IMG/VR virus record: IMGVR_UViG_3300018424_000006
Span: 1-64,000 of that record
Strand: one strand, 5' to 3'
DNA: 64,000 nucleotides
The notes under the pieces: generated by a model
Seen by the model: the letters and a program-made list of their open reading frames with translations, nothing else
The model's database searches: none
What the model was told of the DNA's origin: nothing
Part shown: piece after piece, positions 1,928 through 64,000 of the stretch
How positions within the stretch are numbered: position 1 is the first letter of the stretch
Layout of the letters: the number at the start of each line of letters is the position of its first letter
Program-made: the position numbers and the translations under genes

Positions 1928-1952
1928 GTAATATAGAATTGAAAAATCCTAG
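1928..1952 (-). promoter_or_regulatory. Putative early (virion RNAP) promoter CTAGGA-N8-TTCTATATTAC
   Basis: Matches the TATATTAC early-promoter core known for phiKZ; one of four aligned intergenic copies. Confidence 0.75.
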
Positions 1953-46954: not shown

Positions 46955-46991
46955 AGAGGGTACGGATTTCCGTACCCTCTTTTTTTGCCGT
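46955..46991 (+). terminator. Intrinsic terminator with TGCCGT tail
   Basis: AGAGGGTACGGA/TCCGTACCCTCT stem, T-tract, then GCCGT. Confidence 0.88.
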
Positions 46992-47181: not shown

Positions 47182-50100
47182 ATGCACCTCTCTAATCAAC
47201 TCGAAACCTTGTTAGCCAAAGCATCTCAGGCCTTACAGGAAACGAGCCAAAGTATAAACTCCGTAGATTCTCAGTCGGATAACAACGTTGTTCAGATTGC
47301 TACACTCACAAACCAAATTCAACAGGTTTTAGATCTTCTATCTGGTATTACCAATATTAATGAATTTCTTTCTGACCAAGATATTATCTCGGACTTGGAT
47401 ACTCCAGCACCTCCTGAGAATAATAAATTGGTTCAAGCCTCAACAGTTTGGCAAATCAATAAAGAGCTAGAATCCTTACTAGATACTCTAGCCGCTTTCG
47501 ATGGCGATGCTGATGGCGTCGATTATGTCGAGAATTTAAATTCAGTTATGACTTGGGCTCGGGCCAACAAAGACATACTGGATGCGATGGCACCCGCTAC
47601 GCCAACGCAAACTGGTTTCTTTTCAAAGGAAGACAAAGCCAAGTTAGATGCACTTGAGCAGGGCGCGACTGCGACCAATCTTTCTGACGATGAAACAACG
47701 AATGATTCAGCTACCGCAGCTAGTACTGCATTGACATTCAAATTAAAAACTGCCCTAGATGACCTTGCTCAAACTGTTAGTGACATTCAGGCTAATGGCG
47801 GAGGAGGCGGTGGCGGAGGTTCCATTACGGATGCTGATGGTGCCGCAATCGAATCTGCTCTAGATGCTCGTTATAACAGTACAGCATGGCGTGATGGATT
47901 GTCCGAATGGACAAATACATTACCTACTATAGTCGATATTAATCAGACTACTAAGGCAACTCAAGACCTAATTATTAACTTAGATAATTATGGTTCTGAT
48001 CCTGACGAAGGTCAGACCTTGACGTATACTTGTTCGCCAATGACTAATGTCACATTAGCGGGTTCCATACTGACTTTCAATAGCCCTAATGTAGGTACCG
48101 AAGTATTTACTATTACGACTGACGATGGAGCAGGCGGTGGCGCGAGCGCAACACTAACGATAACGGTTACTCGTTTCGGATATGTTGAAATAGTAGATAA
48201 GACTGAATATGCTGTTCAGGGAATCGCCAAAGTTATTACACTTGGCCCTACTCATGACGATGAGAATGATCAGGCGGTCTATACTGTTACCGGTAGTACA
48301 GATTTCGTAATGGGCCCAGGTACTAACGAAATAACATTCACGGGTACTACTGTTGCTTCCGTTCCTCTTTCTGTACAAGCAGACGATGGTAATGGGAATA
48401 TATCTAATGCTACTATTACCGTTGAAGTAGAAGCGCCAAGTACTAATCCTTGGCCTGTTGTACAGAACGTGTCACCGCAATATGTAGCTAAGGGAGCGAC
48501 CTTTAGTTTAACGCCAGTAATTACTAACCCAGCTACGGCTGGTGAAGTGAACTGGTTTAAAGAGTTTGGGCCAGATGACCTAGAAGTTAATCCTATTACT
48601 GGCGAGATTACGTGGAATACGCCTTCTGATTGGCAAGCAGAATCTTTTCACGTTATTATCAGGGCAGTTAACTTAGATGCAACAGATGGGATGCTTGAAT
48701 TCATACTACACTACGGAAAGACTGCCGGCGATGTAGTTATGGTTGGTCCTAGTCATTCCTATAAGACATGGCAAGAAGCGCATCCTAACCTTGTTTCAGG
48801 ACAATCTATCATTATTGAAGATGGTAGCTATTCTGATTTTGGTATGGGTATAGGCCGTTTTAATAACGGTAACTGGTATCCGCCTTCAGGTACAGCTACG
48901 GCCCTGACATGCGTTATGGCAGAAACAGTGGGCGGTGTTACGCTAACTGGTGATGCAGGCGTTTCATTTGTTCTCTGGAGTGCGGGAAAGAGTGAAGCTC
49001 AGGACATATCCTTTAGCGGGTTATTCGTTAAAGGCGGTCCGTCCATCAATTTCAATGGGGATAGTAACGATAAACTAAATACTCGTGTTAAGCGCATTAA
49101 AACTATTGCCTGTGGTTGTGATGGCGATGACGCCATTCCCATTTATAGTCGTATTGCCGACGACATACTCATTGAAAGCTGCTATGCTTTTGGTGGAGGT
49201 CGCTATAAGATATCGACTAACGAGTCAACTCGTGTAGTTCAGCGTCGTAATTTAGGACGTATGGATAGAACTGATATGGATGGCGTAGAGGACCCCAAAG
49301 GCACATTCATGGCGTACAATACGTGGGAATTCTACTGGTCTAACCTTATTGATCTTGATGCCCTAGATCGTTTCCGTTCCAACGGTGAGATAGTTGGGGC
49401 CTTCGGTACCCCTGTAACAGGTACCGGAACTACACCTGAAGGTTCGTTTGGTATCATTACTACCTGTATCCACCTTAACTCTGAAAATCGTCTTTGTAAC
49501 TTCGATTCCCAACTCTCGTCTGCAGGTGGCCATTCTGACGTCAAGATGGAACATGTTGCAAGTTTCAATATTAAACCGGACTGGGCCTATGGTTATTCAT
49601 GGGGCTCTGGTTGGTTTGACCGGATGAGTATTGTTAATATTCAACCATTGGCTCCTGTTGACAGTGCTATGATAAATACGGGCGGTCGTTACTATTGTCG
49701 AGGCATGACTAACTCGATTATAGATCAGGTTGATATAACTACTAATGGCGGCACTGGTGACTTTTTCCGAGAACTAAATACTGGTCCGGTAGACATACCG
49801 TATAATGGCGGCGTATCCCGTACAGTTGAAAAGTATGGCGTCTATGGTAACAACATAACCAATGTCGATACGGCAGGTATGATTGGTACAGGCGCACAAT
49901 ACGAAATAAATACTACGACGGTTGATGTTTCAGCAGCCTTTGACTACTTGACTCGCGTAAATGACGACCATGCGCTTGCAGGTCAAAAGGGAGCCGAGGT
50001 ACTTTATCTGAAAGGGAAGTCTGGGCGTTTCTTTGGAGACGCCGGATATGATGAAGATACGAAGATTCCTATGTGGCCGTTTCCACTTCAGCATAAGATG

Positions 50101-53100
50101 GCTGAGAAAATGCGTGAGTGGACTTACACTGGACCTACTTATAGTGGTTGGGATTACACTAACCGAACTGTTGGGGCTAGTGAAACGGCAGACGGTAATC
50201 GTGGCGCATCTGCAATTGGTGAGACCATTACCAATTACGTCTGGGGAGCCTTAGGAAAAACAGTACCTCCGTTTAATGTAAAGGCCGTTCCGGAAGACGG
50301 TGGCTGCACGATTGTTTGGGAGAAGCACGCCCCGATTTCTCGTGATACCATTACCGGCTATAGAATTTACGACTACAGTCAGGTAGACGGTTCCTTGAGT
50401 AATCCTCGCACTATTTCGCGAGATTCTCACAGACACCAGATAACCGGTTTATTGAATGGTTTTGATGCAACGTTTGTCGTGACAGCTATTGATTCTGTTA
50501 AAGGGGAGTCGGGATACGGATATCCGGTGACGGTTAGACCGAATGGTACGCCTACGGTCAAGCCTACTATAACTAATGTGACTGGCAACTTAAACCTAAT
50601 TGAAGGTACAAACTTTACGTTAGGGGCGGTAGTTCAGGGTTACGAAACGCTCTCATGGCTACGGAACGATGTTGTTATCAGTTCTGTAACTGAAGAATCG
50701 TATTCGTCCGTAGCCGCTTTGGTCGATGATGGTGCAGTTTATAAAATCCGTGCCGGTAACCCGGTAGGCATTACCGAGGTCGTCATTTCGACACTCTCCG
50801 TAATTGCCGTGGATTCTACTCCTCCGTCTGTCACTATTGCATTAAATGGTGATACGTTAAACATTGGCTTAGTTGATAACCTCTATCAGAAAGCTGATAT
50901 TAGCCTGCAGCTTTTTGCTGATGATACCCCTGTCGGAAACTCGTTTTCTGGCGCAGTAAGTTCCATAGATTTACTAAATGAAAATTTACCTTTGGGTAAC
51001 CTTTCTTTACGTGTGGAAGCCACTGACCCGCAAAACAACACAGGGACGTCTAGCACAGTACAGTATACAGTAGGTAGTCCGATCTTTACTGATGACTTTA
51101 CAGACGCAAGTCAATGGCTTGCTGGTATTTCTGCGGTAGGTAATATTGGTACTGTAACTGAAACTGCTAGAACCTCAAGTGACGTCTGGACGAATACGAC
51201 CGGCTTTACGTTAAAGTGGAAGCAGAAGATCTTGGATCAGATGGGCGATTACGTCCTTTTCAATATGGATATAGGTATCGCTGTAGACGGTAACCGTGCA
51301 GGTTCAGTCCGACTACGTTTTTATAAACGAAGCGGAAGTAACTCCCTTGCCAGCTATACTAGCCGAGCGGGCGTCGCTACAGGCTTTACTGATACGTTTA
51401 ATGCTGGTAACCCTACTTCGGATACTGGCGGTAACGAACCTTTAATTCAGTATGAGGCAACTGCAATAGGCACTACCTTCACGTTAAAGGCAGATGGTGT
51501 AGTTATTCTGACTGAAACCCTACCGGAAGACATCGGACCGTTCGATGGTAGAATTCAATTTGACCCGGATACTGCTGGAGATATTGAAATTTCGGATATA
51601 GTTGCATATGGAGAAGAAATTCCCGTTAATGCTGCGCCTACCGTAGATCCCCAAACAGTAAATGTAGGAGTTGGTCAAAGCCGAGTCATAACTCTCGGAG
51701 AGCTAACGGATTCTGATGGAGATACGTTGGTCTATAGCGTTACAGGTTCAAGCGACTTTGTTGCAGGACCGGGCGCAAACGAAATAACCTTTGAATCAGC
51801 TAGTGCCGGAGTCCATACGCTTACCGTGACTGCTGACGACCAGAAAGGCTTAAGTACTTCAAACACATTAACGGTTATTGTATCCATTCCACGTCCAGTA
51901 AGTCTAAAGTATGCTTTTAGCGGCTGGGCAAGTATGCAGAATAATCTAGGCGGCCAAAATGATGGACTAGATCCTTCCCTCTATAATCTTGTCGGTAAGA
52001 TGATGACTGATAATGGCATTCTTGGCTACGTCAGTGATTTTGAATACCTTCCAGAAGGGTCTCCTGACATTGACGGAACAGTCGCTACTGCACACGCAAA
52101 TTCCACCGATTCCGAAGTATTTATTATTTCGGCCTATCCGGGTTCTGACGGTATTTGTGCAGATCCTGCTACGTCATCTGGCGCTAAGGGCTCCGGTGCC
52201 GCCGGCTGGGTTCAGAGAGTAGTTGATATTGCTACGCTAGCTGAAAGTAACGGCATGCATCCCGTTCTGTTCCAAGCATGGGGTAATGAAAATGCAAAAG
52301 CGGACTGGGGCAATGCTAAACTTAACACCGATGCCATTCTAGGCATTAAACAGATTGGGGTTATTCGCACAGCAGAAATACTCAAAGCAGTGTACGACGA
52401 TACTGCTTCATATGCAACAAACGTTGCCAATGGCAGGACTAAGTACGAACCTCCTGTGGATACCATGTGGTCTGGCGATATCTCAGATACAATTAATGGT
52501 TCTTATGCAATGCTTTATGCAAATGCGCTAGCTACCATGAAATATATTTCGGGAATAAGTGCTGCTGACAACGCATATGTCGTACCAGCGTACTACCAAA
52601 TGCCTGCTGCATTAGTTAGTCTCATTAAGCAGAAGGTAGATGAGATTCAGGTAGAAACAATGAATGTCTACATACCGGTTGGCGTAGCGCCATCTGCAAA
52701 CGACATTAATGTAAACGCATATCAGGGTGATAGCTATGCCTATGATTTAGAGGCATTAACGCTTATTTCTGATGATGTTGCGATTATACCTGCAAACTTT
52801 ACGCTTTCTAGCGCCACTGCTGCTCACTATACCAGCGCTAATATAGCTAACGGTATTTTGACGATAGTGCCCGGGAGTTCTTATGAGGGCCTTTCCCCTA
52901 TTATAGTAACTTATACGGATGCTGATGGAAACATTACACCTTTTAATGTTAACGTCAATATAAGTGCTAAGCCATCTTCAGATGCAGTAAAGGTCTGGAT
53001 AGATTTTGGTAAAGGGTCGGGTAGTGCATTCGGAACCGACGGGAATCTTTATAACCACGCTACTGCACTCGATGGCGGCGGTGAAGTTATAAACCTTATT

Positions 53101-55038
53101 CGTAGAATGGACGCACTTACCACTCAAGGTAACCTACAGGACGTTAATGGTGTCGTAGTAGGGTCAGTTAGTGCATTGACAACGGATATGTACTCTCCGG
53201 GATATGCGTCTCAGACAGATCCGATTGTAGTTGACTATAACCCTGATAGTTACTTTGACGGCTCGTTGGCTACCATACCTAAAGGTACAACTGTATCTTT
53301 CTCTATCAACGGCTTAACGCCGGGAGATAAGTTCGTAGTTGGTATTGGCGGTATGTATCCATATGCAGATGCTACTAACGTAGTAGATGTAAACGTCAAT
53401 GGGGTAACTGGCAGCTATAACTCGTCTCGTCTATCTAACTTGTTCAGTACATGGCAAGATATAGTGACGGTAAATGCAGATGGTAAAATTATCTTTGCAC
53501 TTAGTCAAAATAGTACTGCCGATCGAGGAGGTTTGTCTTATGTTACCTTAGAGAAGCAGGCAGGTTTACCGCCAGCTACTTCTAACTATTCAGCTGGCGA
53601 TCAGGTAATCAATCCTAATATGCCAACGGCCATGCCAGATAAATGGGTTAATGTTGAAGATCCGACTACAGGAACGCGCCTAACGCGTGTAACTGACTCT
53701 AGTACAGACATGCAACTATCTACCCAGGCGTTAAATGGCAGCTCCAGATGGAGTCAAGAAAATGCTGACGGCTCACTTTATATTGCCTTTGGAAGTGACT
53801 TATCGTCGTCTACCGTACTTAGGAAGACTACTGGTGCGGTTGTAGCCTATCTGGCGTCTGATGACTCAGGAGCCGATGCTAGCACTTTAGGTCTAGAGCA
53901 TGAAGTGCGGTGGGATAAGACTGGTAATCACGCAAACAGGGTTTACTTCAGAAGCGGCATGAGTCTATATCAGATTGACGATGTAACTCAAAACGTTAAT
54001 GCAGATCGTTCTAATCCGACTCGCTCAGTAATTAAGGACTTTAGTTCGTTAATTGACTGGCCTGCTGGAACAGAAGCGTTTGATAAGAAAATCTTCAATG
54101 GTCAGAAAGGGGATAGCTCTTTAGATTCCGACCATTGGGCATTTATGGCTGCTTACAATGACGGCGGTACTTGGAGAATTCGTGCTATAGTGCATTATCA
54201 GATTTCTACTGATACTACGCATATTCTTTATCCGTCTGACTTGATAGGTAGTAGCCTAGATTCTACTCAAGCAACTTCCGACTACTTCACTAGACAACCT
54301 AGTGCAGTAGGTATTTCTCCTTTGGCGACTGGTATTGTAGTACACGTTGCTCGTTCAGATACTGGCGTTTTCGAAGACTTAGCCGATACATGGTTGGATG
54401 GTACACACTTGTGGCCATTAGACTTAGATTGGAGGGCATCAAACCCATTTAAGATTTCGATTAGTGATACCAACTCAGGTTGGTGTTGGTCAGCAGACGG
54501 TCGGGAAATGTTTACATACCTAGATGACCGACGGGATATGTTGTGTGCCACTTATATATCTGGTGCATACAAAGGCTATAGCTTACCTAATACTGCAGTA
54601 CCGGGTCAAGATCCGGGAGTAGGTACAATAGACTTTGCTAGACATATTGATCTTGCATATACAGAAATACATTTTAGTCAGATGCCTCAAAGTAAGCCGG
54701 GCTGGGTTTTATTATCCACCTACGATACTAGTGACGAATGGGCCGATGATCAACTAATGATGTTTGAAGTCGTTGACCATAACTCCTCTCCTAATTGGTG
54801 GAGGGTTAGTCCTATGTATAGTAAGTATAGCGGTCAGGCTTTTGATGAAGCTCCTGCGAGCATGTCTTTGGATGGTAATTCTATCTATGTGTCACAGAAC
54901 TGGGGAACTAGTGACGGCGCATCGAATGAAGTATTCCGATATGACTTACCTGAAGATTGGCAGACTACTGCACCTACCACTAACAGTGGTGTTGTATATG
55001 GTGAAGTAATTGAAATAACAGGCGTGGAGGTTTCCTAA
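47182..55038 (+). CDS. Giant multidomain appendage protein (2618 aa): anchor, Ig/cadherin-like repeats, beta-helix, FN3, lectin-like, SGNH-like, lyase-like beta-propeller
   Basis: Shared N-terminal anchor; Gly8 linker at 47797-47820; DxD(G/N)D Ig repeats; parallel beta-helix about 48730-50260; FN3 'PPFNVKAVPEDG'; propeller beginning 'DPTTGTRLTRVTD'. Confidence 0.8.
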   Translation: MHLSNQLETLLAKASQALQETSQSINSVDSQSDNNVVQIATLTNQIQQVLDLLSGITNINEFLSDQDIISDLDTPAPPENNKLVQASTVWQINKELESLLDTLAAFDGDADGVDYVENLNSVMTWARANKDILDAMAPATPTQTGFFSKEDKAKLDALEQGATATNLSDDETTNDSATAASTALTFKLKTALDDLAQTVSDIQANGGGGGGGGSITDADGAAIESALDARYNSTAWRDGLSEWTNTLPTIVDINQTTKATQDLIINLDNYGSDPDEGQTLTYTCSPMTNVTLAGSILTFNSPNVGTEVFTITTDDGAGGGASATLTITVTRFGYVEIVDKTEYAVQGIAKVITLGPTHDDENDQAVYTVTGSTDFVMGPGTNEITFTGTTVASVPLSVQADDGNGNISNATITVEVEAPSTNPWPVVQNVSPQYVAKGATFSLTPVITNPATAGEVNWFKEFGPDDLEVNPITGEITWNTPSDWQAESFHVIIRAVNLDATDGMLEFILHYGKTAGDVVMVGPSHSYKTWQEAHPNLVSGQSIIIEDGSYSDFGMGIGRFNNGNWYPPSGTATALTCVMAETVGGVTLTGDAGVSFVLWSAGKSEAQDISFSGLFVKGGPSINFNGDSNDKLNTRVKRIKTIACGCDGDDAIPIYSRIADDILIESCYAFGGGRYKISTNESTRVVQRRNLGRMDRTDMDGVEDPKGTFMAYNTWEFYWSNLIDLDALDRFRSNGEIVGAFGTPVTGTGTTPEGSFGIITTCIHLNSENRLCNFDSQLSSAGGHSDVKMEHVASFNIKPDWAYGYSWGSGWFDRMSIVNIQPLAPVDSAMINTGGRYYCRGMTNSIIDQVDITTNGGTGDFFRELNTGPVDIPYNGGVSRTVEKYGVYGNNITNVDTAGMIGTGAQYEINTTTVDVSAAFDYLTRVNDDHALAGQKGAEVLYLKGKSGRFFGDAGYDEDTKIPMWPFPLQHKMAEKMREWTYTGPTYSGWDYTNRTVGASETADGNRGASAIGETITNYVWGALGKTVPPFNVKAVPEDGGCTIVWEKHAPISRDTITGYRIYDYSQVDGSLSNPRTISRDSHRHQITGLLNGFDATFVVTAIDSVKGESGYGYPVTVRPNGTPTVKPTITNVTGNLNLIEGTNFTLGAVVQGYETLSWLRNDVVISSVTEESYSSVAALVDDGAVYKIRAGNPVGITEVVISTLSVIAVDSTPPSVTIALNGDTLNIGLVDNLYQKADISLQLFADDTPVGNSFSGAVSSIDLLNENLPLGNLSLRVEATDPQNNTGTSSTVQYTVGSPIFTDDFTDASQWLAGISAVGNIGTVTETARTSSDVWTNTTGFTLKWKQKILDQMGDYVLFNMDIGIAVDGNRAGSVRLRFYKRSGSNSLASYTSRAGVATGFTDTFNAGNPTSDTGGNEPLIQYEATAIGTTFTLKADGVVILTETLPEDIGPFDGRIQFDPDTAGDIEISDIVAYGEEIPVNAAPTVDPQTVNVGVGQSRVITLGELTDSDGDTLVYSVTGSSDFVAGPGANEITFESASAGVHTLTVTADDQKGLSTSNTLTVIVSIPRPVSLKYAFSGWASMQNNLGGQNDGLDPSLYNLVGKMMTDNGILGYVSDFEYLPEGSPDIDGTVATAHANSTDSEVFIISAYPGSDGICADPATSSGAKGSGAAGWVQRVVDIATLAESNGMHPVLFQAWGNENAKADWGNAKLNTDAILGIKQIGVIRTAEILKAVYDDTASYATNVANGRTKYEPPVDTMWSGDISDTINGSYAMLYANALATMKYISGISAADNAYVVPAYYQMPAALVSLIKQKVDEIQVETMNVYIPVGVAPSANDINVNAYQGDSYAYDLEALTLISDDVAIIPANFTLSSATAAHYTSANIANGILTIVPGSSYEGLSPIIVTYTDADGNITPFNVNVNISAKPSSDAVKVWIDFGKGSGSAFGTDGNLYNHATALDGGGEVINLIRRMDALTTQGNLQDVNGVVVGSVSALTTDMYSPGYASQTDPIVVDYNPDSYFDGSLATIPKGTTVSFSINGLTPGDKFVVGIGGMYPYADATNVVDVNVNGVTGSYNSSRLSNLFSTWQDIVTVNADGKIIFALSQNSTADRGGLSYVTLEKQAGLPPATSNYSAGDQVINPNMPTAMPDKWVNVEDPTTGTRLTRVTDSSTDMQLSTQALNGSSRWSQENADGSLYIAFGSDLSSSTVLRKTTGAVVAYLASDDSGADASTLGLEHEVRWDKTGNHANRVYFRSGMSLYQIDDVTQNVNADRSNPTRSVIKDFSSLIDWPAGTEAFDKKIFNGQKGDSSLDSDHWAFMAAYNDGGTWRIRAIVHYQISTDTTHILYPSDLIGSSLDSTQATSDYFTRQPSAVGISPLATGIVVHVARSDTGVFEDLADTWLDGTHLWPLDLDWRASNPFKISISDTNSGWCWSADGREMFTYLDDRRDMLCATYISGAYKGYSLPNTAVPGQDPGVGTIDFARHIDLAYTEIHFSQMPQSKPGWVLLSTYDTSDEWADDQLMMFEVVDHNSSPNWWRVSPMYSKYSGQAFDEAPASMSLDGNSIYVSQNWGTSDGASNEVFRYDLPEDWQTTAPTTNSGVVYGEVIEITGVEVS

Positions 55039-58000: not shown

Positions 58001-58112
58001 TGGCGGTTATTCCTATAGTGCTGGTAGCACTGCAGGTATCGCTTACTTTAAATACCTTGTTCGTGACGGTAATGAAATCGCTATTGCAGTGGAACGCATT
58101 ACAGTTACATAA
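55038..58112 (+). CDS. Beta-helix + Ig + SGNH/GDSL esterase + Ig/PKD multidomain protein
   Basis: Block I 'VLFLGNSLT', block V 'ADNTHQNLAG' (DxxH); TAATG overlap with the upstream gene. Confidence 0.75.
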   Translation: MPFTYIVDTNPAVQGNADTFATFDACMTHIYDTHGVYLDSGGDAGLVTINFRNSSGVPLNEFVDVNRFFPNGTNRIEIVGQMANGFPAVVEDWVDNTETLVFRVYDDYIDVYGETEDSFIIRGDLAVTTGKALFSVSKDMSKFERISLDGVDSSYYAGISGSNTATGSHLKIVRCKRQFYGAIRAGNVSLDHCTINNCRLIRSSGIITNSIVANITSHSENDGFIDGSDYNIYDVDKATIKYNSSVADTSLVDVNSQFSVDIAANFNEDTFGAYNLKAGSVAENADSTGTGNPGADTDALVGEPPQLSIYLNGDTLTAVVSDDATANPSLQLYIDGVAQGSAQTATSWDMTQFALATGVYRLSVEATDDDSNSAVSNERYYSVGGILKVLFLGNSLTQTPVEPAGVSDALYHTVRKMFQSVGSDIFIDWSMIGGATFEEHYGSTVSRSKISSGNYDVILMQGEGNDYADDAWYDTWCKPMVDDAKAANTDWVFWAHWHRENETDRYADRLANQVNGAARMGCDLIDTISAWHNIQANNPTFDLYADNTHQNLAGEFINAIAIYRYLTGNPSSTPSYVQPLLTTDVGSGGLGYTTADLDIIRTQVDTDITNQFVRTGVNSCSVIITQPSGAIDVTVGTEVTFTATATDSSTGDLSANIVWKDNDGVTLHTGNTFSTTTLPTGNLLITANCVGSDGKTTTAARSVKVRTLVNSAPVTQKGYREVDYQSPFTQLSLAALMTDDNDELDLNTLTITQQPRNCTAVQDGQTLTTLNVDYSGTEFYGTDTLKYTIADMDGAVSNESVYEIYVKPPPASTGTLRGGLNITRGSAFVIDLERYWPNGDASMVEVYVVDTSDGTEYKCTVTANAKNEITCTAPNTIDLTTTLSNATIRIKPIATLGKGDGSSTANTNELQDLSFSIAAGADGILRSTHENGSVPSLIAGPLNVYHFDGSVAVGGLFDRPGVVVTANDATWEVIEEDALGGSFEYFTGGGYSYSAGSTAGIAYFKYLVRDGNEIAIAVERITVT

Positions 58113-58126
58113 ATGGAGTTTGAAAA

Positions 58127-59878
58127 ATGAAACGTTTAATCCAGCTTTTGGTTTGGTCTATTTCTTTAACCATTATGTCAGAAGCAAGTGCGCTTAAACT
58201 AAACTCCGGTAACAGTACCACAGTGGCCCGTGGGGCCACTGTATCTGTATCGGCCGGGAAAGTTTATTATGTTAGGCCGGGTGGAGGGAATGACACTCAA
58301 TGTACTGGCCTTGCTGATGTTGACTATGACGGTAGTGGGACAGGAGAAGCTTGTGCTTTTTCTACTCCATTCTACGCCCTTGGGTCTGGCGACGTAGGCC
58401 TTAAAATGGTTGGGGGTGATACACTAATAATTGCTGACGGTAATTATGATATTGGGTACGGTGCAAAAGGTACTGAAGGCTTAAGTTGTAGTACGTCTTG
58501 GGCTTGGTCATGCCATTTAAGTGCTATTCCCTCAGGAACCCCCGGAAGGCCAACGCGAATACTTGGAGCTAACTATAAAACAGGTTGTGCAACCAGCCCT
58601 AAGTTTATAGGTATAGAACGGGCCGAAGCAATTCTTAACTTAGAGGATTCCAACTTTGTTGAAGTTCAATGCCTTGAGCTAACGGATGATGAAGAATGTG
58701 GACAAGGACATCTCTCTACTCCTTATGGAATTGGGGTCGCTGCGGCATGTGCAGGAGAGTATCCATTCGGCCGGTGGGCACGTAATGGAATCTATGCGGC
58801 GAGATCCGACAATGTTTATCTGAAAGATATCCATATCCACGGAACAGGCTCTAACGGACTCTATTCGCATACCCTATCAAACTGGCATCTAGATAATGTT
58901 GATATCATTGGTGTTGCTAGCGCAGGTTGGTCAGGTGATGCCGGCGGCAACCCTACCAACAATACGGGTTATTTTAGATGGTGGAATAGCGAAATTAGCT
59001 GGAGTGGCTGCATAGAGTCTAAAACACAAAATGGTTATATGCTAGATGCTAGCTGTACTGGTCAGAATGGTGGCAACTATTCAGACGGTATCGGTTTCAG
59101 TAAAACAGGCGGTAATTACCATTTTAAAAATATGCTAGTCCATCACAATGTTCAGGACGGCATAGACCTACTCTATCTTGACGGCGAAGTAGGGACTGAA
59201 CTGCTCGTTGAGGATTCTTTATTTTACGGGAACGGTGGTAACGGACTAAAGTCAGGACCTACATATAGCGGACAGCTCACTCGTGACAGTACGATAATCG
59301 CTAACTGTAGTGAGATGGGGGATAGTAAACGCTGGGTAGCTGCCGGTACAAACACAATGTGTCGGGCAGGCGGTGGTCCTATTAGTGGACGAGGAGTTTA
59401 TGAACGCGTCTCTATTTATACAAATGGCGATGGAATTTTCTCTACTCAATGCCGTTATGAAAAATGTGGCAATGTCCACTTTATAGACTCTATCTTATTT
59501 GCCGGTGATGAAGTAGACTGGACTGGTGGTGATGATACTAGGACAGTTGAGAAAGCGGCATTAGGCTGGAACGATGCAGCTGCCAACCCGGCCTCGGAAT
59601 GGAGGTTTACGAATACCATAGTTTGGGACCCAAAAGGCACCCTAGCTAACGGAGTGGTGTATTTCGTAAATGGGGTAGAAACGACAATAACCGATAACTG
59701 TCAGGTATCTAGTTTTAAGGATGATACGTTAGACCTTACTGGCTGTCAAGACCCCGGCTTCACCGCATTCCCCGGAGGAGCAGATGGACCACTATACTGG
59801 AATGACGTAGAGTCTTTAGAGATAGATCCTAGTAGTCAGTTCTTTGGAAAAGAAATAGGCGATTGGAGAAGACAGTAA
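58127..59878 (+). CDS. Secreted right-handed beta-helix protein, PL9-like polysaccharide lyase
   Basis: Sec signal MKRLIQLLVWSISLTIMSEASA|; 16 Cys; 'SDGI', 'HNVQDGIDL' and 'GNGGNGLKSG' resemble PL9 Ca-binding and catalytic-Lys motifs. Confidence 0.65.
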   Translation: MKRLIQLLVWSISLTIMSEASALKLNSGNSTTVARGATVSVSAGKVYYVRPGGGNDTQCTGLADVDYDGSGTGEACAFSTPFYALGSGDVGLKMVGGDTLIIADGNYDIGYGAKGTEGLSCSTSWAWSCHLSAIPSGTPGRPTRILGANYKTGCATSPKFIGIERAEAILNLEDSNFVEVQCLELTDDEECGQGHLSTPYGIGVAAACAGEYPFGRWARNGIYAARSDNVYLKDIHIHGTGSNGLYSHTLSNWHLDNVDIIGVASAGWSGDAGGNPTNNTGYFRWWNSEISWSGCIESKTQNGYMLDASCTGQNGGNYSDGIGFSKTGGNYHFKNMLVHHNVQDGIDLLYLDGEVGTELLVEDSLFYGNGGNGLKSGPTYSGQLTRDSTIIANCSEMGDSKRWVAAGTNTMCRAGGGPISGRGVYERVSIYTNGDGIFSTQCRYEKCGNVHFIDSILFAGDEVDWTGGDDTRTVEKAALGWNDAAANPASEWRFTNTIVWDPKGTLANGVVYFVNGVETTITDNCQVSSFKDDTLDLTGCQDPGFTAFPGGADGPLYWNDVESLEIDPSSQFFGKEIGDWRRQ

Positions 59879-61575
59879 TGGGACAAACACTTAGAGTCGG
59901 CTCGGCTCAAGCTCATACGAATATTATTTCAGCACTAACGGCTCTAGGTGATATTGCCGGTACTGGAGAAAACATCATCTTGGTGGATGCTGGGTATAGC
60001 ACAACTGAAGATTTGGTTTTAGGTAGCTATATATCGAACTCTGGATCTGGAGACTTCATCCGTATTTCTGGAGACAGTGGAAGGTTTACCCTTACACCCT
60101 CCGTTGATTCGATTGAACTAGATGCTACAGATTGTATCTTAGAGAATGTCGATATAGTTACAGGGATAGCTAACCAAACGGCAGTACGACTAACCGGGAC
60201 CAACGTTCTCCTTAGACATTATTCTATTACACGCAATGCAAATGGATATTGTATTAGTGGTACTGGGGGCTCCGGAACGATTGAAGACGGTATCCATTAC
60301 GGAGATATCTCTTATCAAGCAAGGACTCTCCCTACAGCCAGAAGAATAACATGCGGCCCTTCCGATTACGGGCTTCATGTAACGACAGCCGAAGACTGTT
60401 TGGTATTTGATACGTCATTTAGTGACGATATAAATGCCACTACAGTAACCAACTGTGCGACGTCAGATACATCTGGTACATCTCCGTATCAGAACATAGT
60501 TCCGGCAACAGAGTTGGTGGACCCGACAAATAACGACTATACCTTAAAGGCCGATTCTCAGCTCATTGGTAAGGGTGTTACTGGGTTCAGTATCGGCGGA
60601 GACCAAACGACAGGCTATACTGCCCCAGCCACGCTCTCCTCTCTAACTATTAATAGCATTACCCAAACCACCGCCACAGCGAACTTAGATACAGATTTTG
60701 GAGACGGAAGTCTTTACTGGGTTTTAGTTACTGATGGAAGCAGTCCTTCAGTAGACCAGATTAAAGCTGGTACTAATGAAGACGACACTGTAGCAGCGTT
60801 AAGTGGTAGTCAAGCTGTAGGCGGAGTGGGCGCGCAAATTGTCAGTCTGACAGGTTTGACGCTCTATACTGACTACGTTATCTTTATCGTACATGCAAGA
60901 ACGGCAGTCTCTAACTCTAATATCCTTACGGCGGCGTTTCAGAGCGCAGATACTCCAAGACCGGTAATATCTAGTCTGAGTGGCTCAGTTGTTGAAGGAG
61001 AATCTTTATTGATAACCTGTACCGCAGCCGGAACATCTAGCGGAAAGGTTACTATAGGGGGAGTACAACAACGCGTCACTAGTTGGAGTCCAACTTCTAT
61101 AACAATTAATATAGCGGCTGGCGATCAAGCGTTTGGAGTAAAAGATCTTTTAGTGGAAGACGCTGGAGGTATTATATCTCGTCCTTACTCCGTAGAGTTA
61201 AAGCCAGGAGCTACCTTTACTTATACCGACTTAACCAATCCCGGGTCAGGTCCGGAACACCTATTTCAAGGTGCTTTCCCTGCAGTTAAAACTGGTGATC
61301 AGGTTATCTTTGAAAAAGTAACAAATCTGTCCCATGGCGTATATGTCGGGGAAGATGGCATTTTCTATTTAATGGGAGCAGGCGGGGTAGGAACTACCCA
61401 AACCTTTAAGATAAAGGTTTTCTTCAACGACTTATCAAGATGGTCAAATGAAGCTACAGTGACAGTTAATGAAGTAGTGGCACAAGTGGTTTTTGATAAT
61501 AATCTTCAACACGAGCCAGTGGCGGTTGAAGGCTATGACTTCGAGTTAACACTGGATGGAGTTCAGGTATCATGA
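59878..61575 (+). CDS. Beta-helix + FN3 + IPT/TIG multidomain protein
   Basis: Start ATG 59878 (TAATG overlap); 'DPTNNDYTLKADSQLIGKG' helix cap; FN3 'LTGLTLYTDY'; IPT 'VTSWSPTSITI'. Confidence 0.7.
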   Translation: MGQTLRVGSAQAHTNIISALTALGDIAGTGENIILVDAGYSTTEDLVLGSYISNSGSGDFIRISGDSGRFTLTPSVDSIELDATDCILENVDIVTGIANQTAVRLTGTNVLLRHYSITRNANGYCISGTGGSGTIEDGIHYGDISYQARTLPTARRITCGPSDYGLHVTTAEDCLVFDTSFSDDINATTVTNCATSDTSGTSPYQNIVPATELVDPTNNDYTLKADSQLIGKGVTGFSIGGDQTTGYTAPATLSSLTINSITQTTATANLDTDFGDGSLYWVLVTDGSSPSVDQIKAGTNEDDTVAALSGSQAVGGVGAQIVSLTGLTLYTDYVIFIVHARTAVSNSNILTAAFQSADTPRPVISSLSGSVVEGESLLITCTAAGTSSGKVTIGGVQQRVTSWSPTSITINIAAGDQAFGVKDLLVEDAGGIISRPYSVELKPGATFTYTDLTNPGSGPEHLFQGAFPAVKTGDQVIFEKVTNLSHGVYVGEDGIFYLMGAGGVGTTQTFKIKVFFNDLSRWSNEATVTVNEVVAQVVFDNNLQHEPVAVEGYDFELTLDGVQVS

Positions 61576-63593
61576 AGCGAATAATGAACATCAATGCAAC
61601 TGATGTAGTCTCACCCGGCGAAGTTGTTGATATACAACTCGCTGAATGTAATCCGATAAAGCTTTACGGAGCTTTACGGAAAAATGCAACCGACTATCCG
61701 CTAGAAGAAATTAGCTGGGATAAAGCTAGTAATGTTTGGCGGGTACGTACGGCTGCAAATCTACCTATTGATACTGGTTATCAGCTACGAGTATGGTTTA
61801 ATGATGCTAACATTATACCTGTTCCCGATGGTGGTCAGTACAGCGGGTTTGTAGGCGTAGACCTACAGATCCGTTTAGGTGACGTAGTAGATGGCGATAA
61901 TGAAGCAGTTACTTATAGCGCTATAAGTAGCGGTGACGCATCACTATCTATTGTAAATAATATTTTAACAGTTAACGCTAATACGGAAGGTACTGAAACA
62001 ATTACAGTGACTGCTACAGACTCTGTAGGAGCTTCTGGACAGAATACCATTACTCTAGAAGTTGTAGGCGAGGCGGTAACGACATTTGCGTACTTAACAA
62101 ACGACGTAAGTGTTATTGCTCCGTATTATGACGCAGGGCAGCCTGCCAAATTAGGTACGGTAACCGACCCTGTTACTGGTGTAACTATTCGCCGTATGTC
62201 AGATTCATCTACTGACTTGCAGCAATCCGATCAAGGTCTAAATGGTTATTCAAGATGGACCCAGATTAATTCGGACGGGACTAAGTTGCTGATCTTCGGT
62301 TCGAACTCTACTTCGTGTACAGTCCTAGAAGTTTCTACTGGCGCTGTCGTAGCATATTTAGCTTATGACGACTCTGGCAATGGCGTGACTACATTAGGTA
62401 TGGCCCATGAAGTAAGATGGGACTTATCTGGTAATCACCCCAATCGAGTTTATTTTAGAAATGGCACCCAATTCTTTCAGATTGATGATGTTACTCAGAA
62501 CAACAATGCCGATCGATCTAACCCAACTAGATCCGTTATTAAAGACTTTGAATCATTAATAACGTGGCCATCGGGTAGTTCTGGCCATCAGATAGAAAAT
62601 GATCAAGAAGGCGACTCGTCTAATGACTCCGACCATTGGGCATTTATGGCGACGTATTATGAGGCTGCTGGAGATACGACTCGCTGTAGAGCATTTATCC
62701 ATTACCAGATCTCTACCGATACAATGCACATTATGTATCCTAGTGACTTAGCCGGTGCTCCTGTAGCGACCTTTAGGATAAACGATTCAAGTGATTTTGC
62801 CAGTCTTGATAGTATTAAGGATATGGATTATTTCCCTGCTCGTCCTAACATGGTAGAGATATCTCCACTAGGTACAGGGTTTGTAATCCATAACGGTCGG
62901 GCTTGGGACCCGGCTACAACCATCTCGGGTACTTGGTTCGATGGTCCTCATTTATGGCCTCTAGATTTAGATTGGCAGCGTGAAGCGCCTTTCAGAATCT
63001 CTATTGACCAATCTCACTCCGGCTGGGCGTTTGCTAAAGACGGAAGAGAGATGTTTGTTTATCAGGACAACAGACGTGACTTCCTAACTGCCACCTATAT
63101 CAGTGGTGCAGTTAAAGGTTATAACCTTAATTCTGATGCCGGTCCTAATGACGTTACTAATGAAGGTAGTATAGATTTCGCTTATCATAGCGATCTATCG
63201 TGGACTGGATTCCACTTTGGTAAGATGCCTCCTAATCGTCCAGGATTTGTTATGGTATCTACCTACTCAGGCGGTATCGACGAATGGGCCGATGAACAGC
63301 TTCTTATGATCGAAATTAAAGATAAAGATGCTCCCACACCCCCTAAGATTCTTAGGATTGCTCCTATGTACCATGAGTATGAAAGTGCTTACTGGGATGA
63401 AGCAACTGCTAGTATGGACGTAACTGGAAATATAATTTGTGTGGCTCAGAACTGGGGTCTTGCAAATGGTGCTTCAAATGAAGTATATTTCTATGAACTA
63501 CCTAACGACTGGCATGCGAAGTTATCTGCGCCGACGTGGTATCCTCCGGAATACTACCAAACCGTAATTGTAAATAGTGTAGAGGTGGTCTAG
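61572..63593 (+). CDS. Ig-like + oligogalacturonate-lyase-like (PL22-type) beta-propeller protein
   Basis: 'DPVTGVTIRRMSD...YSRW..INSDGTKLL'; clearly paralogous to the C-terminal domain of 47182-55038; ATGA overlap. Confidence 0.7.
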   Translation: MKRIMNINATDVVSPGEVVDIQLAECNPIKLYGALRKNATDYPLEEISWDKASNVWRVRTAANLPIDTGYQLRVWFNDANIIPVPDGGQYSGFVGVDLQIRLGDVVDGDNEAVTYSAISSGDASLSIVNNILTVNANTEGTETITVTATDSVGASGQNTITLEVVGEAVTTFAYLTNDVSVIAPYYDAGQPAKLGTVTDPVTGVTIRRMSDSSTDLQQSDQGLNGYSRWTQINSDGTKLLIFGSNSTSCTVLEVSTGAVVAYLAYDDSGNGVTTLGMAHEVRWDLSGNHPNRVYFRNGTQFFQIDDVTQNNNADRSNPTRSVIKDFESLITWPSGSSGHQIENDQEGDSSNDSDHWAFMATYYEAAGDTTRCRAFIHYQISTDTMHIMYPSDLAGAPVATFRINDSSDFASLDSIKDMDYFPARPNMVEISPLGTGFVIHNGRAWDPATTISGTWFDGPHLWPLDLDWQREAPFRISIDQSHSGWAFAKDGREMFVYQDNRRDFLTATYISGAVKGYNLNSDAGPNDVTNEGSIDFAYHSDLSWTGFHFGKMPPNRPGFVMVSTYSGGIDEWADEQLLMIEIKDKDAPTPPKILRIAPMYHEYESAYWDEATASMDVTGNIICVAQNWGLANGASNEVYFYELPNDWHAKLSAPTWYPPEYYQTVIVNSVEVV

Positions 63594-64000
63594 TGGCTAT
63601 TAATTTAACTCTGGATACTGATCCATTACAGGCTAATGGCTCAACTATCTTTAATACATTTGAAGACTTAAAAGCATATATAACGACTACTTACGGCAAT
63701 AGCTGGACCGGACAAGGAACATTAACTGTTACGTGTCAATCTAGTGACGGCCAGCCTTATGTAGGTGGTATTGTTGTAGACGACTTCGTCCCTAGTGAAA
63801 CAGATAATATGATTATCCGTGCCGTTAAAGTGGGCAATACTCCATTCCGCCAAACACCCCCAGATAACTTTACTAGTTCTCTTATAGGTATAGCTGACGA
63901 CTATGTTGACGTTATAACGGAATTAGGCACTTGGTTCTTGGATGGAAGTCAGGGAGCGATTAATAATCACTTCTTCTGTCACTCTTCTAAGGCGGGTGTA
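63593..64000 (+). CDS. 3'-truncated paralog of the 55038 protein (absent from the ORF track)
   Basis: GTG overlapping the TAG (TAGTG) with SD GAGGTGG. Open to the window end: MAINLTLDTDP..NG.T.FNTF...DDYVDV aligns with MPFTYIVDTNP..GN..TFATF...DDYIDV. Confidence 0.75.
   Translation, partial: MAINLTLDTDPLQANGSTIFNTFEDLKAYITTTYGNSWTGQGTLTVTCQSSDGQPYVGGIVVDDFVPSETDNMIIRAVKVGNTPFRQTPPDNFTSSLIGIADDYVDVITELGTWFLDGSQGAINNHFFCHSSKAGV

What the first reader, a model, noticed from the sequence alone, without database searches (positions are those of the whole stretch)
47182..64000. Candidate new system: a phage 'depolymerase train' of an anchored giant scaffold plus coupled anchor-less carbohydrate enzymes
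Seen: at least six genes over 17 kb, four of the five junctions overlapping (TAATG 55036, TAATG 59876, ATGA 61572, TAGTG 63591). Only the first has the shared anchor. It is built like a bacterial adhesin: Ca-type Ig/cadherin repeats, FN3 and lectin-like spacers between a beta-helix, an SGNH-like domain and a lyase-like propeller. The followers carry an SGNH esterase, a PL9-like lyase, further beta-helices and a PL22-like propeller, and share Ig modules with the scaffold (e.g. PP.V.I.LNGDTL...SLQL..D...LRVEATD at 50812 and 55945). De-acetylase plus endo-lyase plus oligo-lyase would form a complete pathway for an acetylated uronic-acid polysaccharide. Inference: a cellulosome-like multi-enzyme appendage for burrowing through capsule/biofilm or binding marine particles, unlike classical trimeric tailspikes.
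Basis: partly seen in the sequence, partly recalled or inferred. Interest (0 to 1): 0.85.

Follow-up and report, generated by a model that had tools for sequence, protein, structure and literature searches.

The report
Daisy-chained tail-fibre enzyme gene train
An uncultured salt-marsh jumbo phage has a 17.5-kb run of tail-fibre genes with sugar-enzyme-like domains, and short connector pieces conserved in a dozen unrelated marine phages suggest each protein plugs into the one encoded before it.

Summary
The gene layout is real. g1 to g6 lie on the + strand, four of the five junctions overlap exactly as reported, and strong hairpin terminators bracket the unit. The window is bases 1-64000 of a 219.8-kb phiKZ-like contig. 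g6 ends at contig base 64729.

- **Anchor:** the roughly 195-aa N-terminal anchor of g1 is shared with the upstream fibre gA and with g7, which lies beyond the window.
- **Supported domain calls:** Ig/cadherin-like repeats; a conserved SGNH-like triad in g2; a Pel9A-like beta-helix in g3; beta-helix heads in g2 and g6; a beta-propeller in g5 and the g1 C-terminus.
- **Unsupported calls:** the "PL22" label, the g1 beta-helix and the metabolic pathway. The SGNH-like copy in g1 is degenerate.
- **Main new result:** every protein encoded just before a g2/g6-like gene (12 of 12 loci, several phage types) ends in a 16-residue tag at a fixed distance from the C-terminus. More than 100 bacterial homologues of the propeller lack it. 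A second connector, the g2 C-terminal domain, always precedes g3-like then g4-like genes. All g3-likes carry a Sec-type signal peptide, which is unexplained.

The likeliest reading is a serially docked multi-protein fibre, not a cellulosome-like scaffold. This is a new variant of known multi-protein phage fibres.

The parts
41814..46937 (+). gA: 1707-aa fibre upstream of the finding. It has the shared N-terminal anchor and a C-terminal Peptidase_G2 intramolecular-chaperone domain (residues 1467-1705).
   Evidence: Pfam PF11962 at E 2.3e-54 and phrog_4775. Anchor match to g1 at 41% identity.
46955..46980 (+). Strong terminator-like hairpin (11-bp stem followed by a T run) between gA and g1. It marks the 5' boundary of the unit.
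47182..55038 (+). g1: 2618-aa anchored giant fibre protein. It is a fusion of modules that are separate genes in other phages.
   Evidence: L003 1358-aa protein is 44% identical to g1 220-1476, and L003 814-aa protein is 54% identical to g1 2142-2593. L018 shows the same split.
47182..47766 (+). g1 residues 1-195: N-terminal anchor shared with gA, g7 and the L009 887-aa protein.
47914..48711 (+). g1 Ig-like domains (Big_9/PKD type), about residues 245-510.
   Evidence: Pfam Big_9 at E 9.5e-5, marginal.
48694..50271 (+). g1 residues 505-1030: large domain with a beta-helix-like start motif. The fold is not verified.
   Evidence: No Pfam hit. hhalign to the g3 and g4 profiles aligns only a short N-terminal motif. 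48% identical to the L003 1358-aa protein.
50266..50529 (+). g1 residues 1029-1116: FN3-like domain.
   Evidence: Pfam fn3 at E 9e-4, below the gathering score.
50812..51075 (+). g1 residues 1211-1298: Ig module shared with g2 residues 304-384.
   Evidence: 38% identity, E 7e-7.
51889..52671 (+). g1 residues 1570-1830: degenerate SGNH-like domain. The Ser and His positions of the g2 family are not conserved here.
   Evidence: Homology through L005, L013 and L014 proteins. Alignment columns.
53605..54981 (+). g1 residues 2142-2600: beta-propeller, paralogous to g5.
   Evidence: 51% identity to g5, E 8e-162. g5 model.
54988..55035 (+). g1 C-terminal 16-residue connector tag (…VYGEVIEITGVEVS). 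Its GAGGT also serves as the Shine-Dalgarno site of g2.
55038..58112 (+). g2: 1024-aa follower. Beta-helix head (1-300), Ig (305-385), SGNH-like domain (387-607), three Ig/cadherin-like domains (620-892), disordered linker (895-969), small beta C-terminal domain (969-1024).
   Evidence: AF2 model, pLDDT 85. Homologues. Foldseek cadherin/Ig hits.
56196..56858 (+). g2 SGNH-like esterase domain. G-N-S395-L, G433-G434, Q461-G462 and D546-x-x-H549-Q are conserved in about 20-23 of 23 homologues.
   Evidence: Profile hits PDB 4s1p at E 1.7e-9 and 4i8i at E 0.011. One homologue hits DUF4886 at E 0.005.
57942..58109 (+). g2 C-terminal domain (Cdom). This is the second connector type and is always followed by a g3-like gene.
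   Evidence: 46% identical domains in L009, L016 and L017 proteins, each followed by a g3-like gene.
58127..59878 (+). g3: 583 aa. Sec-type signal peptide (residues 1-22, nt 58127-58192) followed by a Pel9A/DUF1565-like right-handed beta-helix (residues 34-583).
   Evidence: ESM Atlas feature score 0.96 and TM 0.78. Pfam Beta_helix 21.5 bits, below the cut-off. Signal peptides in all four g3-likes.
59878..61575 (+). g4: 565 aa. Probable beta-helix (1-443) plus Ig/FN3-like C-terminus, ending in an L-variant of the connector tag (nt 61525-61572, …YDFELTLDGVQVS).
   Evidence: Atlas TM 0.46, weak. Almost no homologues by word search. 32-34% identical to L013/L016 and L017 proteins. Tag comparison.
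61572..63593 (+). g5: 673 aa. N-terminal beta-sandwich domain (1-95), Ig (96-170), beta-propeller (185-650), connector tag (nt 63543-63590, …EYYQTVIVNSVEVV).
   Evidence: AF2 model pLDDT 86, with the tag region at low confidence. Foldseek finds generic propellers only. 149 homologues.
63593..64000 (+). g6, 5' part: 378 aa in all, GTG start, ends at contig base 64729. Small right-handed beta-helix head plus C-terminal Ig. Paralogue of the g2 head. A 14-bp-stem hairpin follows at contig 64770-64801.

Best explanation
The locus encodes one composite tail fibre (receptor-binding appendage) of a phiKZ-like salt-marsh jumbo phage. It appears to be assembled as a daisy chain rather than on a scaffold.

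**Proposed assembly**
1. g1 attaches to the tail through the N-terminal anchor it shares with gA and g7.
2. The 16-residue C-terminal hairpin-like tag of g1 docks the N-terminal beta-helix head of g2, whose gene starts on g1's stop codon.
3. The small C-terminal domain of g2 partners with g3, a Pel9A-like beta-helix.
4. g4 follows g3.
5. The tag of g4 docks the N-terminal domain of g5.
6. The tag of g5 docks the head of g6.

Translational coupling through 1-nt or 4-nt overlaps, with the Shine-Dalgarno site embedded in the tag, would keep the partners in matched amounts. The chain would display an SGNH-type esterase (g2), a lyase/hydrolase-like beta-helix (g3), further beta-helices (g4, g6) and two copies of an uncharacterised beta-propeller (g1 C-terminus, g5). 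This suggests binding or cutting of a decorated host surface polysaccharide.

**Shown:** gene order, overlaps, paralogy, folds, conserved SGNH residues, and the association of connectors with followers across phages.

**Inferred:** physical docking, presence in the virion, enzyme activities and the substrate.
For: **Layout and coupling**
- ORFs and junction overlaps.
- The unit is bracketed by strong hairpins.

**Anchor**
- Shared by gA, g1 and g7, and by the L009 887-aa protein.

**Connector tag, type 1**
- Twelve of 12 proteins that immediately precede a g2/g6-like gene end in Y(-13) G(-12) I/V(-9) h(-7) turn h(-4) E V x. There are no indels relative to the C-terminus.
- The gap is a 1-nt overlap or at most 2 nt.
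- The domain before the tag varies: propeller, Ig, or another domain.

**Tag specificity and level of selection**
- P0002-P0009, the nine closest relatives of g5 in the search (56-49% identity; the six whose contigs were fetched lie among phage tail genes), all end in the tag or a loose variant of it.
- 111 more distant homologues, many of them chromosomal bacterial proteins, end right after the propeller without it.
- A motif written from the first 11 junctions found no other match among 409 ORFs.
- Conserved residues use synonymous codons, so selection acts on the protein.
- The tag is low-confidence in the monomer model, as expected for a peptide that orders on binding.

**Followers**
- Followers start at residue 1 with a conserved strand, M-[PA]-x-T-Y-I-x-D-T-[DN]. 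The head is never internal among the head-bearing hits listed.
- The L-variant tag on g4 and on the L010 230-aa protein precedes the g5-type N-domain in 2 of 2 cases.

**Second connector**
- The order Cdom, then g3-like, then g4-like is conserved in the window, L009, L016/L013 and L017.
- L007 and L017 have the same flanking genes (Pfam Phage_tail_terminator_9 upstream, E217_gp31_N downstream) but carry alternative connector-plus-follower cassettes.

**Folds**
-.
- SGNH residues.

**Presence in RNA libraries**
- The locus is present, contiguous across the junctions and without indels, in four salt-marsh metatranscriptome runs.
Against: - No protein-protein interaction was computed or measured.
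- The connector-follower association could partly reflect cassettes that are inherited together.
- The E-V at the end of the tag is explained by the Shine-Dalgarno sequence, not by protein function.
- The tag motif was defined after seeing the sequences.
- All four g3-like proteins have canonical Sec-type signal peptides. That argues for export rather than incorporation into a virion assembled in the cytoplasm.
- No connector was found between g3 and g4.
- g4 has almost no homologues.
- Enzyme activities are inferred from fold and motifs only. The propeller has no characterised relative.
- The RNA-library signal could be carried-over DNA.
- No cultured relative or virion proteome exists for these proteins.
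Confidence: 0.55

Rival explanations
1. g1 is a cellulosome-like scaffold, and the anchorless enzymes hang on it side by side through shared Ig or adaptor modules. Together they form a complete pathway for an acetylated uronic-acid polysaccharide.
For: - g1 is very long and rich in Ig-like modules.
- One Ig module is shared with g2.
- The followers lack the anchor.
- An esterase-like and a lyase-like fold are present.
Against: - No cohesin/dockerin-like or repeated docking modules were found.
- The two halves of g1 are separate genes in L003 and L018, each with its own N-terminal domain in L003.
- The conserved connectors sit at the extreme C-termini and N-termini, and they are specific to the next gene.
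- The SGNH-like copy in g1 is degenerate.
- There is no link to PL22.
Confidence: 0.1
2. The g2/g6-like proteins are fibre-assembly chaperones or tip adhesins of the gp38/Tfa kind. They recognise the C-terminal tag of their client fibre. The other followers are independent fibres or spikes attached elsewhere on the baseplate. On this view there is no long chain, only leader-helper pairs.
For: - The gene lies immediately downstream of, and is coupled to, the fibre gene, as for T4/T2 gp38 and for marine phage V22 (PMC7289586; PMC6957217).
- The tag is specific to proteins that have such a follower.
- g6-likes are small, about 375 aa.
Against: - g2-likes are 880-1024 aa with a conserved SGNH triad and five Ig-like domains. 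That is not chaperone-like.
- g2 itself carries a further connector, followed by the conserved g3-like and g4-like genes.
- A gp38-type adhesin that stays on the tip is in effect the same as serial docking.
Confidence: 0.2
3. Some followers, at least g3, are not virion parts. They would be exported soluble enzymes made by the infected cell, for example to strip the cell's own polysaccharide, help release of progeny or prevent re-adsorption to debris. Their place in the fibre operon would reflect co-regulation only.
For: - Canonical signal peptides in 4 of 4 phage g3-likes: a basic n-region, a hydrophobic core of about 12-14 residues, and small residues at -3/-1 (ASA, VQA, SHS, VLA).
- The nearest structural relatives are bacterial Pel9A/DUF1565-type beta-helix proteins, and the match starts at residue 34, after the signal-like segment.
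- In the neighbouring g5 propeller family, a bacterial homologue (P0010) also starts with a signal-like segment.
Against: - g3-likes always sit between a protein carrying the Cdom and a g4-like gene, inside fibre cassettes of several phage types.
- A g3-like beta-helix is an internal domain of a protein annotated as a virion structural protein in Tunturiibacter phage Tunturi_1.
- No signal-peptide predictor or experiment was available.
Confidence: 0.15

Closest known systems
Branched multi-depolymerase tail fibres of jumbo Klebsiella phages (RaK2/phiK64-1, phiKp24) and the CBA120 TSP1-4 complex; the anchor-branch model of Latka et al. 2019
   Same: - Many receptor-binding or enzyme proteins are encoded side by side.
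- One protein bears the N-terminal anchor to the baseplate.
- The others lack it and are thought to dock on partners through short conserved terminal elements (PMC10253068 discussion; PMC9700779; PMC6872550; PMC13352976).
   Different: - In those systems docking is through T4 gp10-like XD domains near the N-terminus of the primary protein, plus N-terminal peptides of the secondary proteins. No such domains were detected here.
- Here the connectors are at the C-terminus of the preceding protein.
- No sequence similarity to any phage in the INPHARED collection.
- The modules look like monomeric bacterial-type enzymes and Ig/cadherin strings rather than demonstrated trimeric tailspikes.
T4-type long tail fibre (gp34-gp35-gp36-gp37, with gp38 adhesin in T2/S16-like phages)
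   Same: Consecutive genes encode consecutive segments that join end to end. The distal partner is encoded just downstream of the protein it attaches to (PMC5537660, PMC6957217; established knowledge).
   Different: - No sequence or domain similarity.
- The segments here carry enzyme-like globular domains.
- The 16-residue tag, the beta-helix head and the Cdom are not known from T4.
- The same connectors occur in phages with different tail gene sets, including T4-like baseplate-wedge and sheath-initiator genes, an SU10-like podovirus set and a tape-measure set.
Cellulosome (cohesin-dockerin scaffoldin systems)
   Same: Functional analogy only: several carbohydrate-active modules are held in one extracellular assembly.
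   Different: - No cohesin or dockerin domains.
- No repeated docking sites on g1.
- The connectivity looks serial.
PL9 pectate lyases (Pel9A) and DUF1565 right-handed beta-helix proteins
   Same: g3 residues 34-583 match Pel9A-like/DUF1565 clusters by language-model features (0.96) and by predicted structure (TM up to 0.78). Like the bacterial enzymes, g3 starts with a signal peptide.
   Different: - Pfam Pel9A-like did not reach significance on g3 itself, and only Beta_helix scored, below its cut-off.
- Catalytic and Ca-binding residues were not examined.
- The substrate is unknown.
SGNH/DUF4886-type hydrolases
   Same: g2 residues 387-607 have an alpha/beta fold with conserved Ser (GNSL), Gly-Gly and Asp-x-x-His motifs. 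The profile hits PDB 4s1p and 4i8i, and one homologue hits DUF4886.
   Different: - No Pfam hit on g2 itself.
- The block III Asn is not clearly conserved.
- Activity is untested.
- The g1 copy lacks Ser and His.

Membership tests
Branched anchor/XD-domain receptor-binding-protein complexes (CBA120, RaK2, Klebsiella KP32-type) | Cluster of several receptor-binding-protein genes in which one protein carries the tail anchor | tested here: met
   Anchor on gA, g1 and g7 only. g2 to g6 are anchorless.
Branched anchor/XD-domain receptor-binding-protein complexes (CBA120, RaK2, Klebsiella KP32-type) | T4 gp10-like (XD) branching domains in the primary protein | tested here: inconclusive
   No such family in the Pfam or PHROG scans of g1, whole or in pieces. 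No structure model of the g1 N-terminal third was made.
Branched anchor/XD-domain receptor-binding-protein complexes (CBA120, RaK2, Klebsiella KP32-type) | Secondary proteins carry a conserved N-terminal docking peptide | tested here: met
   g2/g6-like followers share a conserved N-terminal strand from residue 1. Binding itself was not tested.
Branched anchor/XD-domain receptor-binding-protein complexes (CBA120, RaK2, Klebsiella KP32-type) | Trimeric beta-helix depolymerase bodies | not testable with these tools
   Only monomer predictions were available.
T4-type end-to-end long tail fibre | Consecutive genes encode consecutive, non-covalently joined segments | tested here: inconclusive
   Gene order and junction-specific connectors are conserved in 12 loci. 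Joining is inferred, not shown.
T4-type end-to-end long tail fibre | Homology to gp34-gp38 | tested here: not met
   No PHROG or Pfam hits to these families.
Cellulosome | Scaffoldin with cohesin repeats and enzymes with dockerins | tested here: not met
   No cohesin or dockerin hits in any of the proteins, down to E = 1 for the pieces of g1 and E = 0.01 for the others.
PL9 pectate lyase (g3) | Right-handed parallel beta-helix of the Pel9A type | tested here: met
   ESM Atlas features 0.96. TM 0.52-0.78 to Pel9A-like/DUF1565 clusters.
PL9 pectate lyase (g3) | Significant match to the family profile | tested here: not met
   Only PF13229 Beta_helix at 21.5 bits, below the 25.9 cut-off. No Pel9A-like hit. 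No PDB sequence hit.
PL9 pectate lyase (g3) | Ca-binding Asp cluster, catalytic Lys, and lyase activity | not tested
   No residue-level alignment to Pel9A was made.
SGNH hydrolase (g2 387-607) | Conserved Ser (block I), Gly (block II) and Asp-x-x-His (block V) on an alpha/beta fold | tested here: met
   S395, G433/G434, D546 and H549 are conserved in 19-23 of 22-23 homologues. Alpha/beta secondary structure. Profile hit to PDB 4s1p at E 1.7e-9.
SGNH hydrolase (g2 387-607) | Block III Gly-x-Asn-Asp | tested here: inconclusive
   g2 has GEGND, but the homologues vary at these columns.
SGNH hydrolase (g1 1570-1830) | Catalytic Ser and His | tested here: not met
   The aligned columns read SGWAS and DTIN.
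PL22 oligogalacturonate lyase (g5, g1 C-terminus) | Beta-propeller fold | tested here: met
   AF2 model at pLDDT 86. Foldseek hits to propellers.
PL22 oligogalacturonate lyase (g5, g1 C-terminus) | Sequence, profile or specific structural similarity to PL22 | tested here: not met
   No Pfam hit. No PL22 structure among the top 50 Foldseek PDB hits. The family profile finds nothing relevant among PDB sequences.

The most novel reading that the evidence does not exclude
Marine phages with very different tail gene sets share a portable connector code. It has two parts: a 16-residue C-terminal hairpin tag that captures the N-terminal strand of whatever module is encoded next, and a small C-terminal domain that captures the signal-peptide-like N-terminus of a Pel9A-like beta-helix. 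With this code the phages would build long daisy chains of enzyme and adhesin modules, and exchange links of the chain as gene cassettes. The g3 "signal peptide" would then be a docking helix co-opted from a secreted bacterial enzyme, not an export signal.
Probability: 0.35. Interest if true: 0.8.

Novelty: new variant of a known kind. Interest (0 to 1): 0.62.

Why it matters
Multi-enzyme tail fibres set the host range of large phages, but how their parts are joined is known only for a few enterobacterial systems that use XD/gp10-like branching. Several things would follow if the end-to-end connectors proposed here are real:

- **A second way of joining fibre parts.** It appears to be widespread in uncultured marine and salt-marsh phages.
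- **An explanation for module exchange.** It would show how fibre modules move between phages with different tail types.
- **Tools for engineering.** The connectors are very short and could be used to attach new binding or enzyme modules to phage fibres.
- **Two protein families worth characterising.** These are the tag-bearing beta-propeller, which is common in marine Gammaproteobacteria and has no Pfam family, and the GNSL-type SGNH-like esterase domain.
- **A concrete puzzle.** All g3-like proteins carry a signal peptide despite sitting inside a fibre operon.

Tried and rejected
- **Direct annotation.** Pfam, PHROG and PDB-sequence searches of all proteins were almost blank.
- **Cultured relatives.** megablast and tblastn against the INPHARED phage collection found nothing for the structural block, g1, g2 or the anchor.
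- **IMG/VR scans.** These returned only the window's own contig.
- **Foldseek of the whole g2 model.** The Ig/cadherin repeats swamped the results, which said nothing about the head or the SGNH domain.
- **hhalign of the central g1 domain against the g3 and g4 profiles.** It aligned only a short N-terminal motif, so the g1 beta-helix stays unverified.
- **PL22 assignment.** Rejected.
- **Programmed -1 frameshift fusing leader and follower.** Considered because every follower lies in the -1 frame. Rejected because there is no conserved slippery heptamer in the 11 junctions and no indels or joints in the RNA-library contigs.
- **Tag as a nucleotide-level element or recombination linker.** Rejected for all but the GAGGT Shine-Dalgarno site, because the conserved residues use varied synonymous codons.
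- **TTG at 59863 as the g4 start.** The ATG at 59878 is preferred, because it forms the TAATG junction and the 565-aa form is the one held in the databases.

Full report
**Where the window comes from.** The window is bases 1-64000 of IMG/VR contig IMGVR_UViG_3300018424_000006, which is 219,819 bp long. Runs that hold it are salt-marsh metagenomes and metatranscriptomes. A baseplate protein (1949-3091, minus strand) is most similar to Vibrio phage BONAISHI and other phiKZ-like jumbo phages, at 39% identity or less. Other genes include an SbcC-like nuclease, an NAD-dependent ligase, RNase H and thymidylate synthase. G+C rises from about 0.39-0.41 to 0.43-0.46 across the fibre locus.

**The observation.**
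- g1 47182-55038, g2 55038-58112, g3 58127-59878, g4 59878-61575, g5 61572-63593, and g6 from 63593.
- TAATG at 55036 and 59876, ATGA at 61572, TAGTG at 63591.
- The roughly 195-residue N-terminus of g1 is 41% identical to that of the upstream 1707-aa protein gA, E 5e-40. gA ends in a Peptidase_G2 intramolecular-chaperone domain, E 2.3e-54.
- Reading the contig beyond the window shows that g6 is 378 aa. A 14-bp-stem hairpin follows it, and the next gene, g7 (892 aa), again carries the anchor.
- An 11-bp-stem terminator-like hairpin lies between gA and g1. The six genes g1 to g6 therefore form one bracketed block of about 17.5 kb.
- The shared Ig module at 50812/55945 is real: 38% identity, E 7e-7.

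**What the proteins are.** Standard libraries are nearly silent. They return only marginal Big_9, PKD, fn3 and Beta_helix hits and no PDB sequence hits.
- **g5.** An AlphaFold2 model built on 55 homologues (pLDDT 86) shows two N-terminal beta-sandwich/Ig domains and a beta-propeller, with a poorly ordered last stretch of about 20 residues. Foldseek finds only generic propellers in the PDB, and one unnamed viral protein in BFVD. A family profile finds nothing relevant among PDB sequences. "PL22-like" is therefore unsupported beyond the fold class. The family is large (149 hits), has no Pfam model, and is common in marine Gammaproteobacteria chromosomes.
- **g2.** The model (pLDDT 85) has these parts:
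  - a head of about 300 residues;
  - one Ig domain;
  - an alpha/beta domain at 387-607;
  - three Ig/cadherin-like domains;
  - a 75-residue disordered linker;
  - a small beta domain at the C-terminus.

  The head is a small right-handed beta-helix, judged from g6 in the ESM Atlas (TM 0.5-0.67).
- **The g2 alpha/beta domain.** It keeps G-N-S395-L, G433-G434, Q461-G462 and D546-x-x-H549-Q in nearly all homologues. Its profile hits PDB 4s1p (E 1.7e-9) and 4i8i. An SGNH-type esterase is a reasonable reading.
- **The homologous g1 domain (1570-1830).** It lacks the Ser and His.
- **g3.** It matches Pel9A/DUF1565-type beta-helices: features 0.96, TM 0.78, residues 34-583.
- **g4.** It is a probable beta-helix plus Ig, on weak evidence, and has almost no relatives.
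- **The central g1 domain (505-1030).** It could not be assigned.

**Comparative evidence.** This is the main result. Contigs that encode relatives of g5, g2 and g6 were fetched one at a time.
- **Phage backgrounds.** They come from phages with different tail gene sets:
  - T4-like baseplate-wedge and sheath-initiator genes (L003, L011);
  - an SU10-like podovirus (L010);
  - tube and tape-measure genes (L012);
  - tail-terminator and E217 gp31-like genes (L007, L017);
  - a 185-kb contig (L013/L016).
- **The tag.** In all 12 junctions, the protein encoded immediately before a g2/g6-like gene ends in the same 16-residue tag. It always sits at the same distance from the C-terminus: an aromatic residue at -13 (usually Tyr), Gly at -12, Ile/Val at -9, a hydrophobic residue at -7, a two-residue turn, a hydrophobic residue at -4, then Glu-Val-x. 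The follower starts on the stop codon or within 2 nt.
- **What precedes the tag varies.** It is a propeller in eight junctions, a small Ig protein in L007 and L012, and a different domain in L013 and L014.
- **The tag follows the follower, not the propeller.** P0002-P0009, the nine closest relatives of g5 in the search, all end in the tag or a loose variant of it. Of these, the six whose contigs were fetched lie among phage tail genes. The 111 more distant homologues, many of them bacterial, end just after the propeller without it.
- **Specificity.** A motif written from the first 11 junctions matched none of the other ORFs of 80 aa or more, out of 409 scanned in the window and loci. This check is post hoc.
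- **Level of selection.** Conserved residues use varied synonymous codons. The invariant GAGGT that encodes Glu-Val is the follower's Shine-Dalgarno site.
- **Followers.** They all begin at residue 1 with M-[PA]-x-T-Y-I-x-D-T-[DN]. In an exhaustive search, the head was never internal to a longer protein among the hits listed.

**Other junctions.**
- g4 and the L010 230-aa protein end in a Leu-variant of the tag. Both are followed, with overlap, by the g5-type N-terminal domain, whose first strand (I-M-N-I-N / I-V-N-I-N) resembles that of the heads.
- The extra C-terminal domain of g2 occurs in three other proteins (L009 1002 aa, L016 622 aa, L017 328 aa). Each is followed by a g3-like gene (44-51% identity). 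Wherever the contig continues, a g4-like gene comes next. In L016/L013 that protein ends in a tag and is followed by a g6-like gene.
- L007 and L017 have the same flanking genes, tail terminator upstream and an E217 gp31-like gene downstream. They carry alternative cassettes: tag then g2-like, or Cdom then g3-like then g4-like.
- g1 itself corresponds to two adjacent genes in L003 and L018, each with its own N-terminal domain in L003.

**Interpretation.** The simplest account is a modular fibre whose links are joined end to end by terminal connectors and are exchanged between phages as cassettes. In this phage the chain would be g1, g2, g3 (then g4?), and g4, g5, g6, hung from the anchor of g1. 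It replaces the scaffold or cellulosome picture with serial docking, which is closest in logic to the T4 long tail fibre and to tip adhesins of the gp38 type (PMC5537660, PMC6957217). It is related in purpose to the branched multi-depolymerase fibres of RaK2 and phiKp24 (PMC10253068; PMC9700779). Docking, presence in the virion, oligomeric state and enzyme activities are all inferred.

**An unexplained point.** All four g3-like proteins start with a canonical Sec-type signal peptide. In L017 this holds only after moving the start to an upstream ATG that has a good Shine-Dalgarno site. Either g3 is exported and is not part of the virion, or this hydrophobic N-terminus is what the preceding C-terminal domain holds. 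A g3-like beta-helix is an internal domain of a protein annotated as a virion structural protein in Tunturiibacter phage Tunturi_1.

**Expression.** Contigs from four salt-marsh metatranscriptome runs cover the locus. They run without interruption or indels across the g1/g2 and g2/g3 junctions. DNA carry-over cannot be excluded.

**Verdict.** The locus is real and unusual. It is a new variant of a known kind, the multi-protein, enzyme-bearing phage fibre. The connector system has so far been seen only in silico, is plausibly new, and needs direct binding tests.

Noticed in passing
L001 13252-15930 (contig 64823-67501, beyond the window): g7, an 892-aa protein, is a third carrier of the N-terminal anchor shared by gA and g1 (36% identity to gA). 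The phage therefore has at least three fibres on the same attachment site type.
   Followed up: partly
window 27202-28197 and 35614-36429: Two proteins share a different N-terminal domain of about 170 residues (phrog_2163, "virion structural protein"; E 2e-38 and 2e-29). This may be a second family of shared anchors in the same structural block.
   Followed up: no
window 48000-64000: G+C is 0.43-0.46 across the fibre genes, against 0.38-0.42 in most of the rest of the window (two 2-kb bins at 30-34 kb reach 0.425-0.436). This fits a horizontally exchanged cassette.
   Followed up: no
window 61572-63593 (g5) and proteins P0010-P0120: The g5 propeller belongs to a large family with no Pfam model, found in marine Gammaproteobacteria, Bacteroidota and Acidobacteriota. 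It has many invariant charged and aromatic residues (for example E280, R282, W283, R292, D503, E610, and near-invariant H440, H482, H539, H548). Bacterial members have signal peptides and often Ig domains. Their function is unknown.
   Followed up: partly
L017 3829-5556: The called start of the g3-like gene (3862) is probably wrong. An in-frame ATG at 3829, preceded by AAGGA, adds a basic and hydrophobic N-terminus that restores a canonical signal peptide.
   Followed up: yes
L007 9435-12652 versus L017 2826-7169: Two loci with the same flanking genes (tail terminator upstream, E217 gp31-like gene downstream) carry different connector-plus-follower cassettes at the same position. This amounts to a natural module swap.
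   Followed up: partly
P0005 (750 aa) versus L007 9435-10001: The 188-aa small fibre protein of L007 and the 750-aa propeller protein P0005 share the same first 54 residues. The same N-terminus is therefore joined to different bodies in related phages.
   Followed up: no
window 54500-60400: The locus is present at low depth in four salt-marsh metatranscriptome runs from 2018 and in several DNA runs. One C>T difference at 55093 appears in one run.
   Followed up: partly
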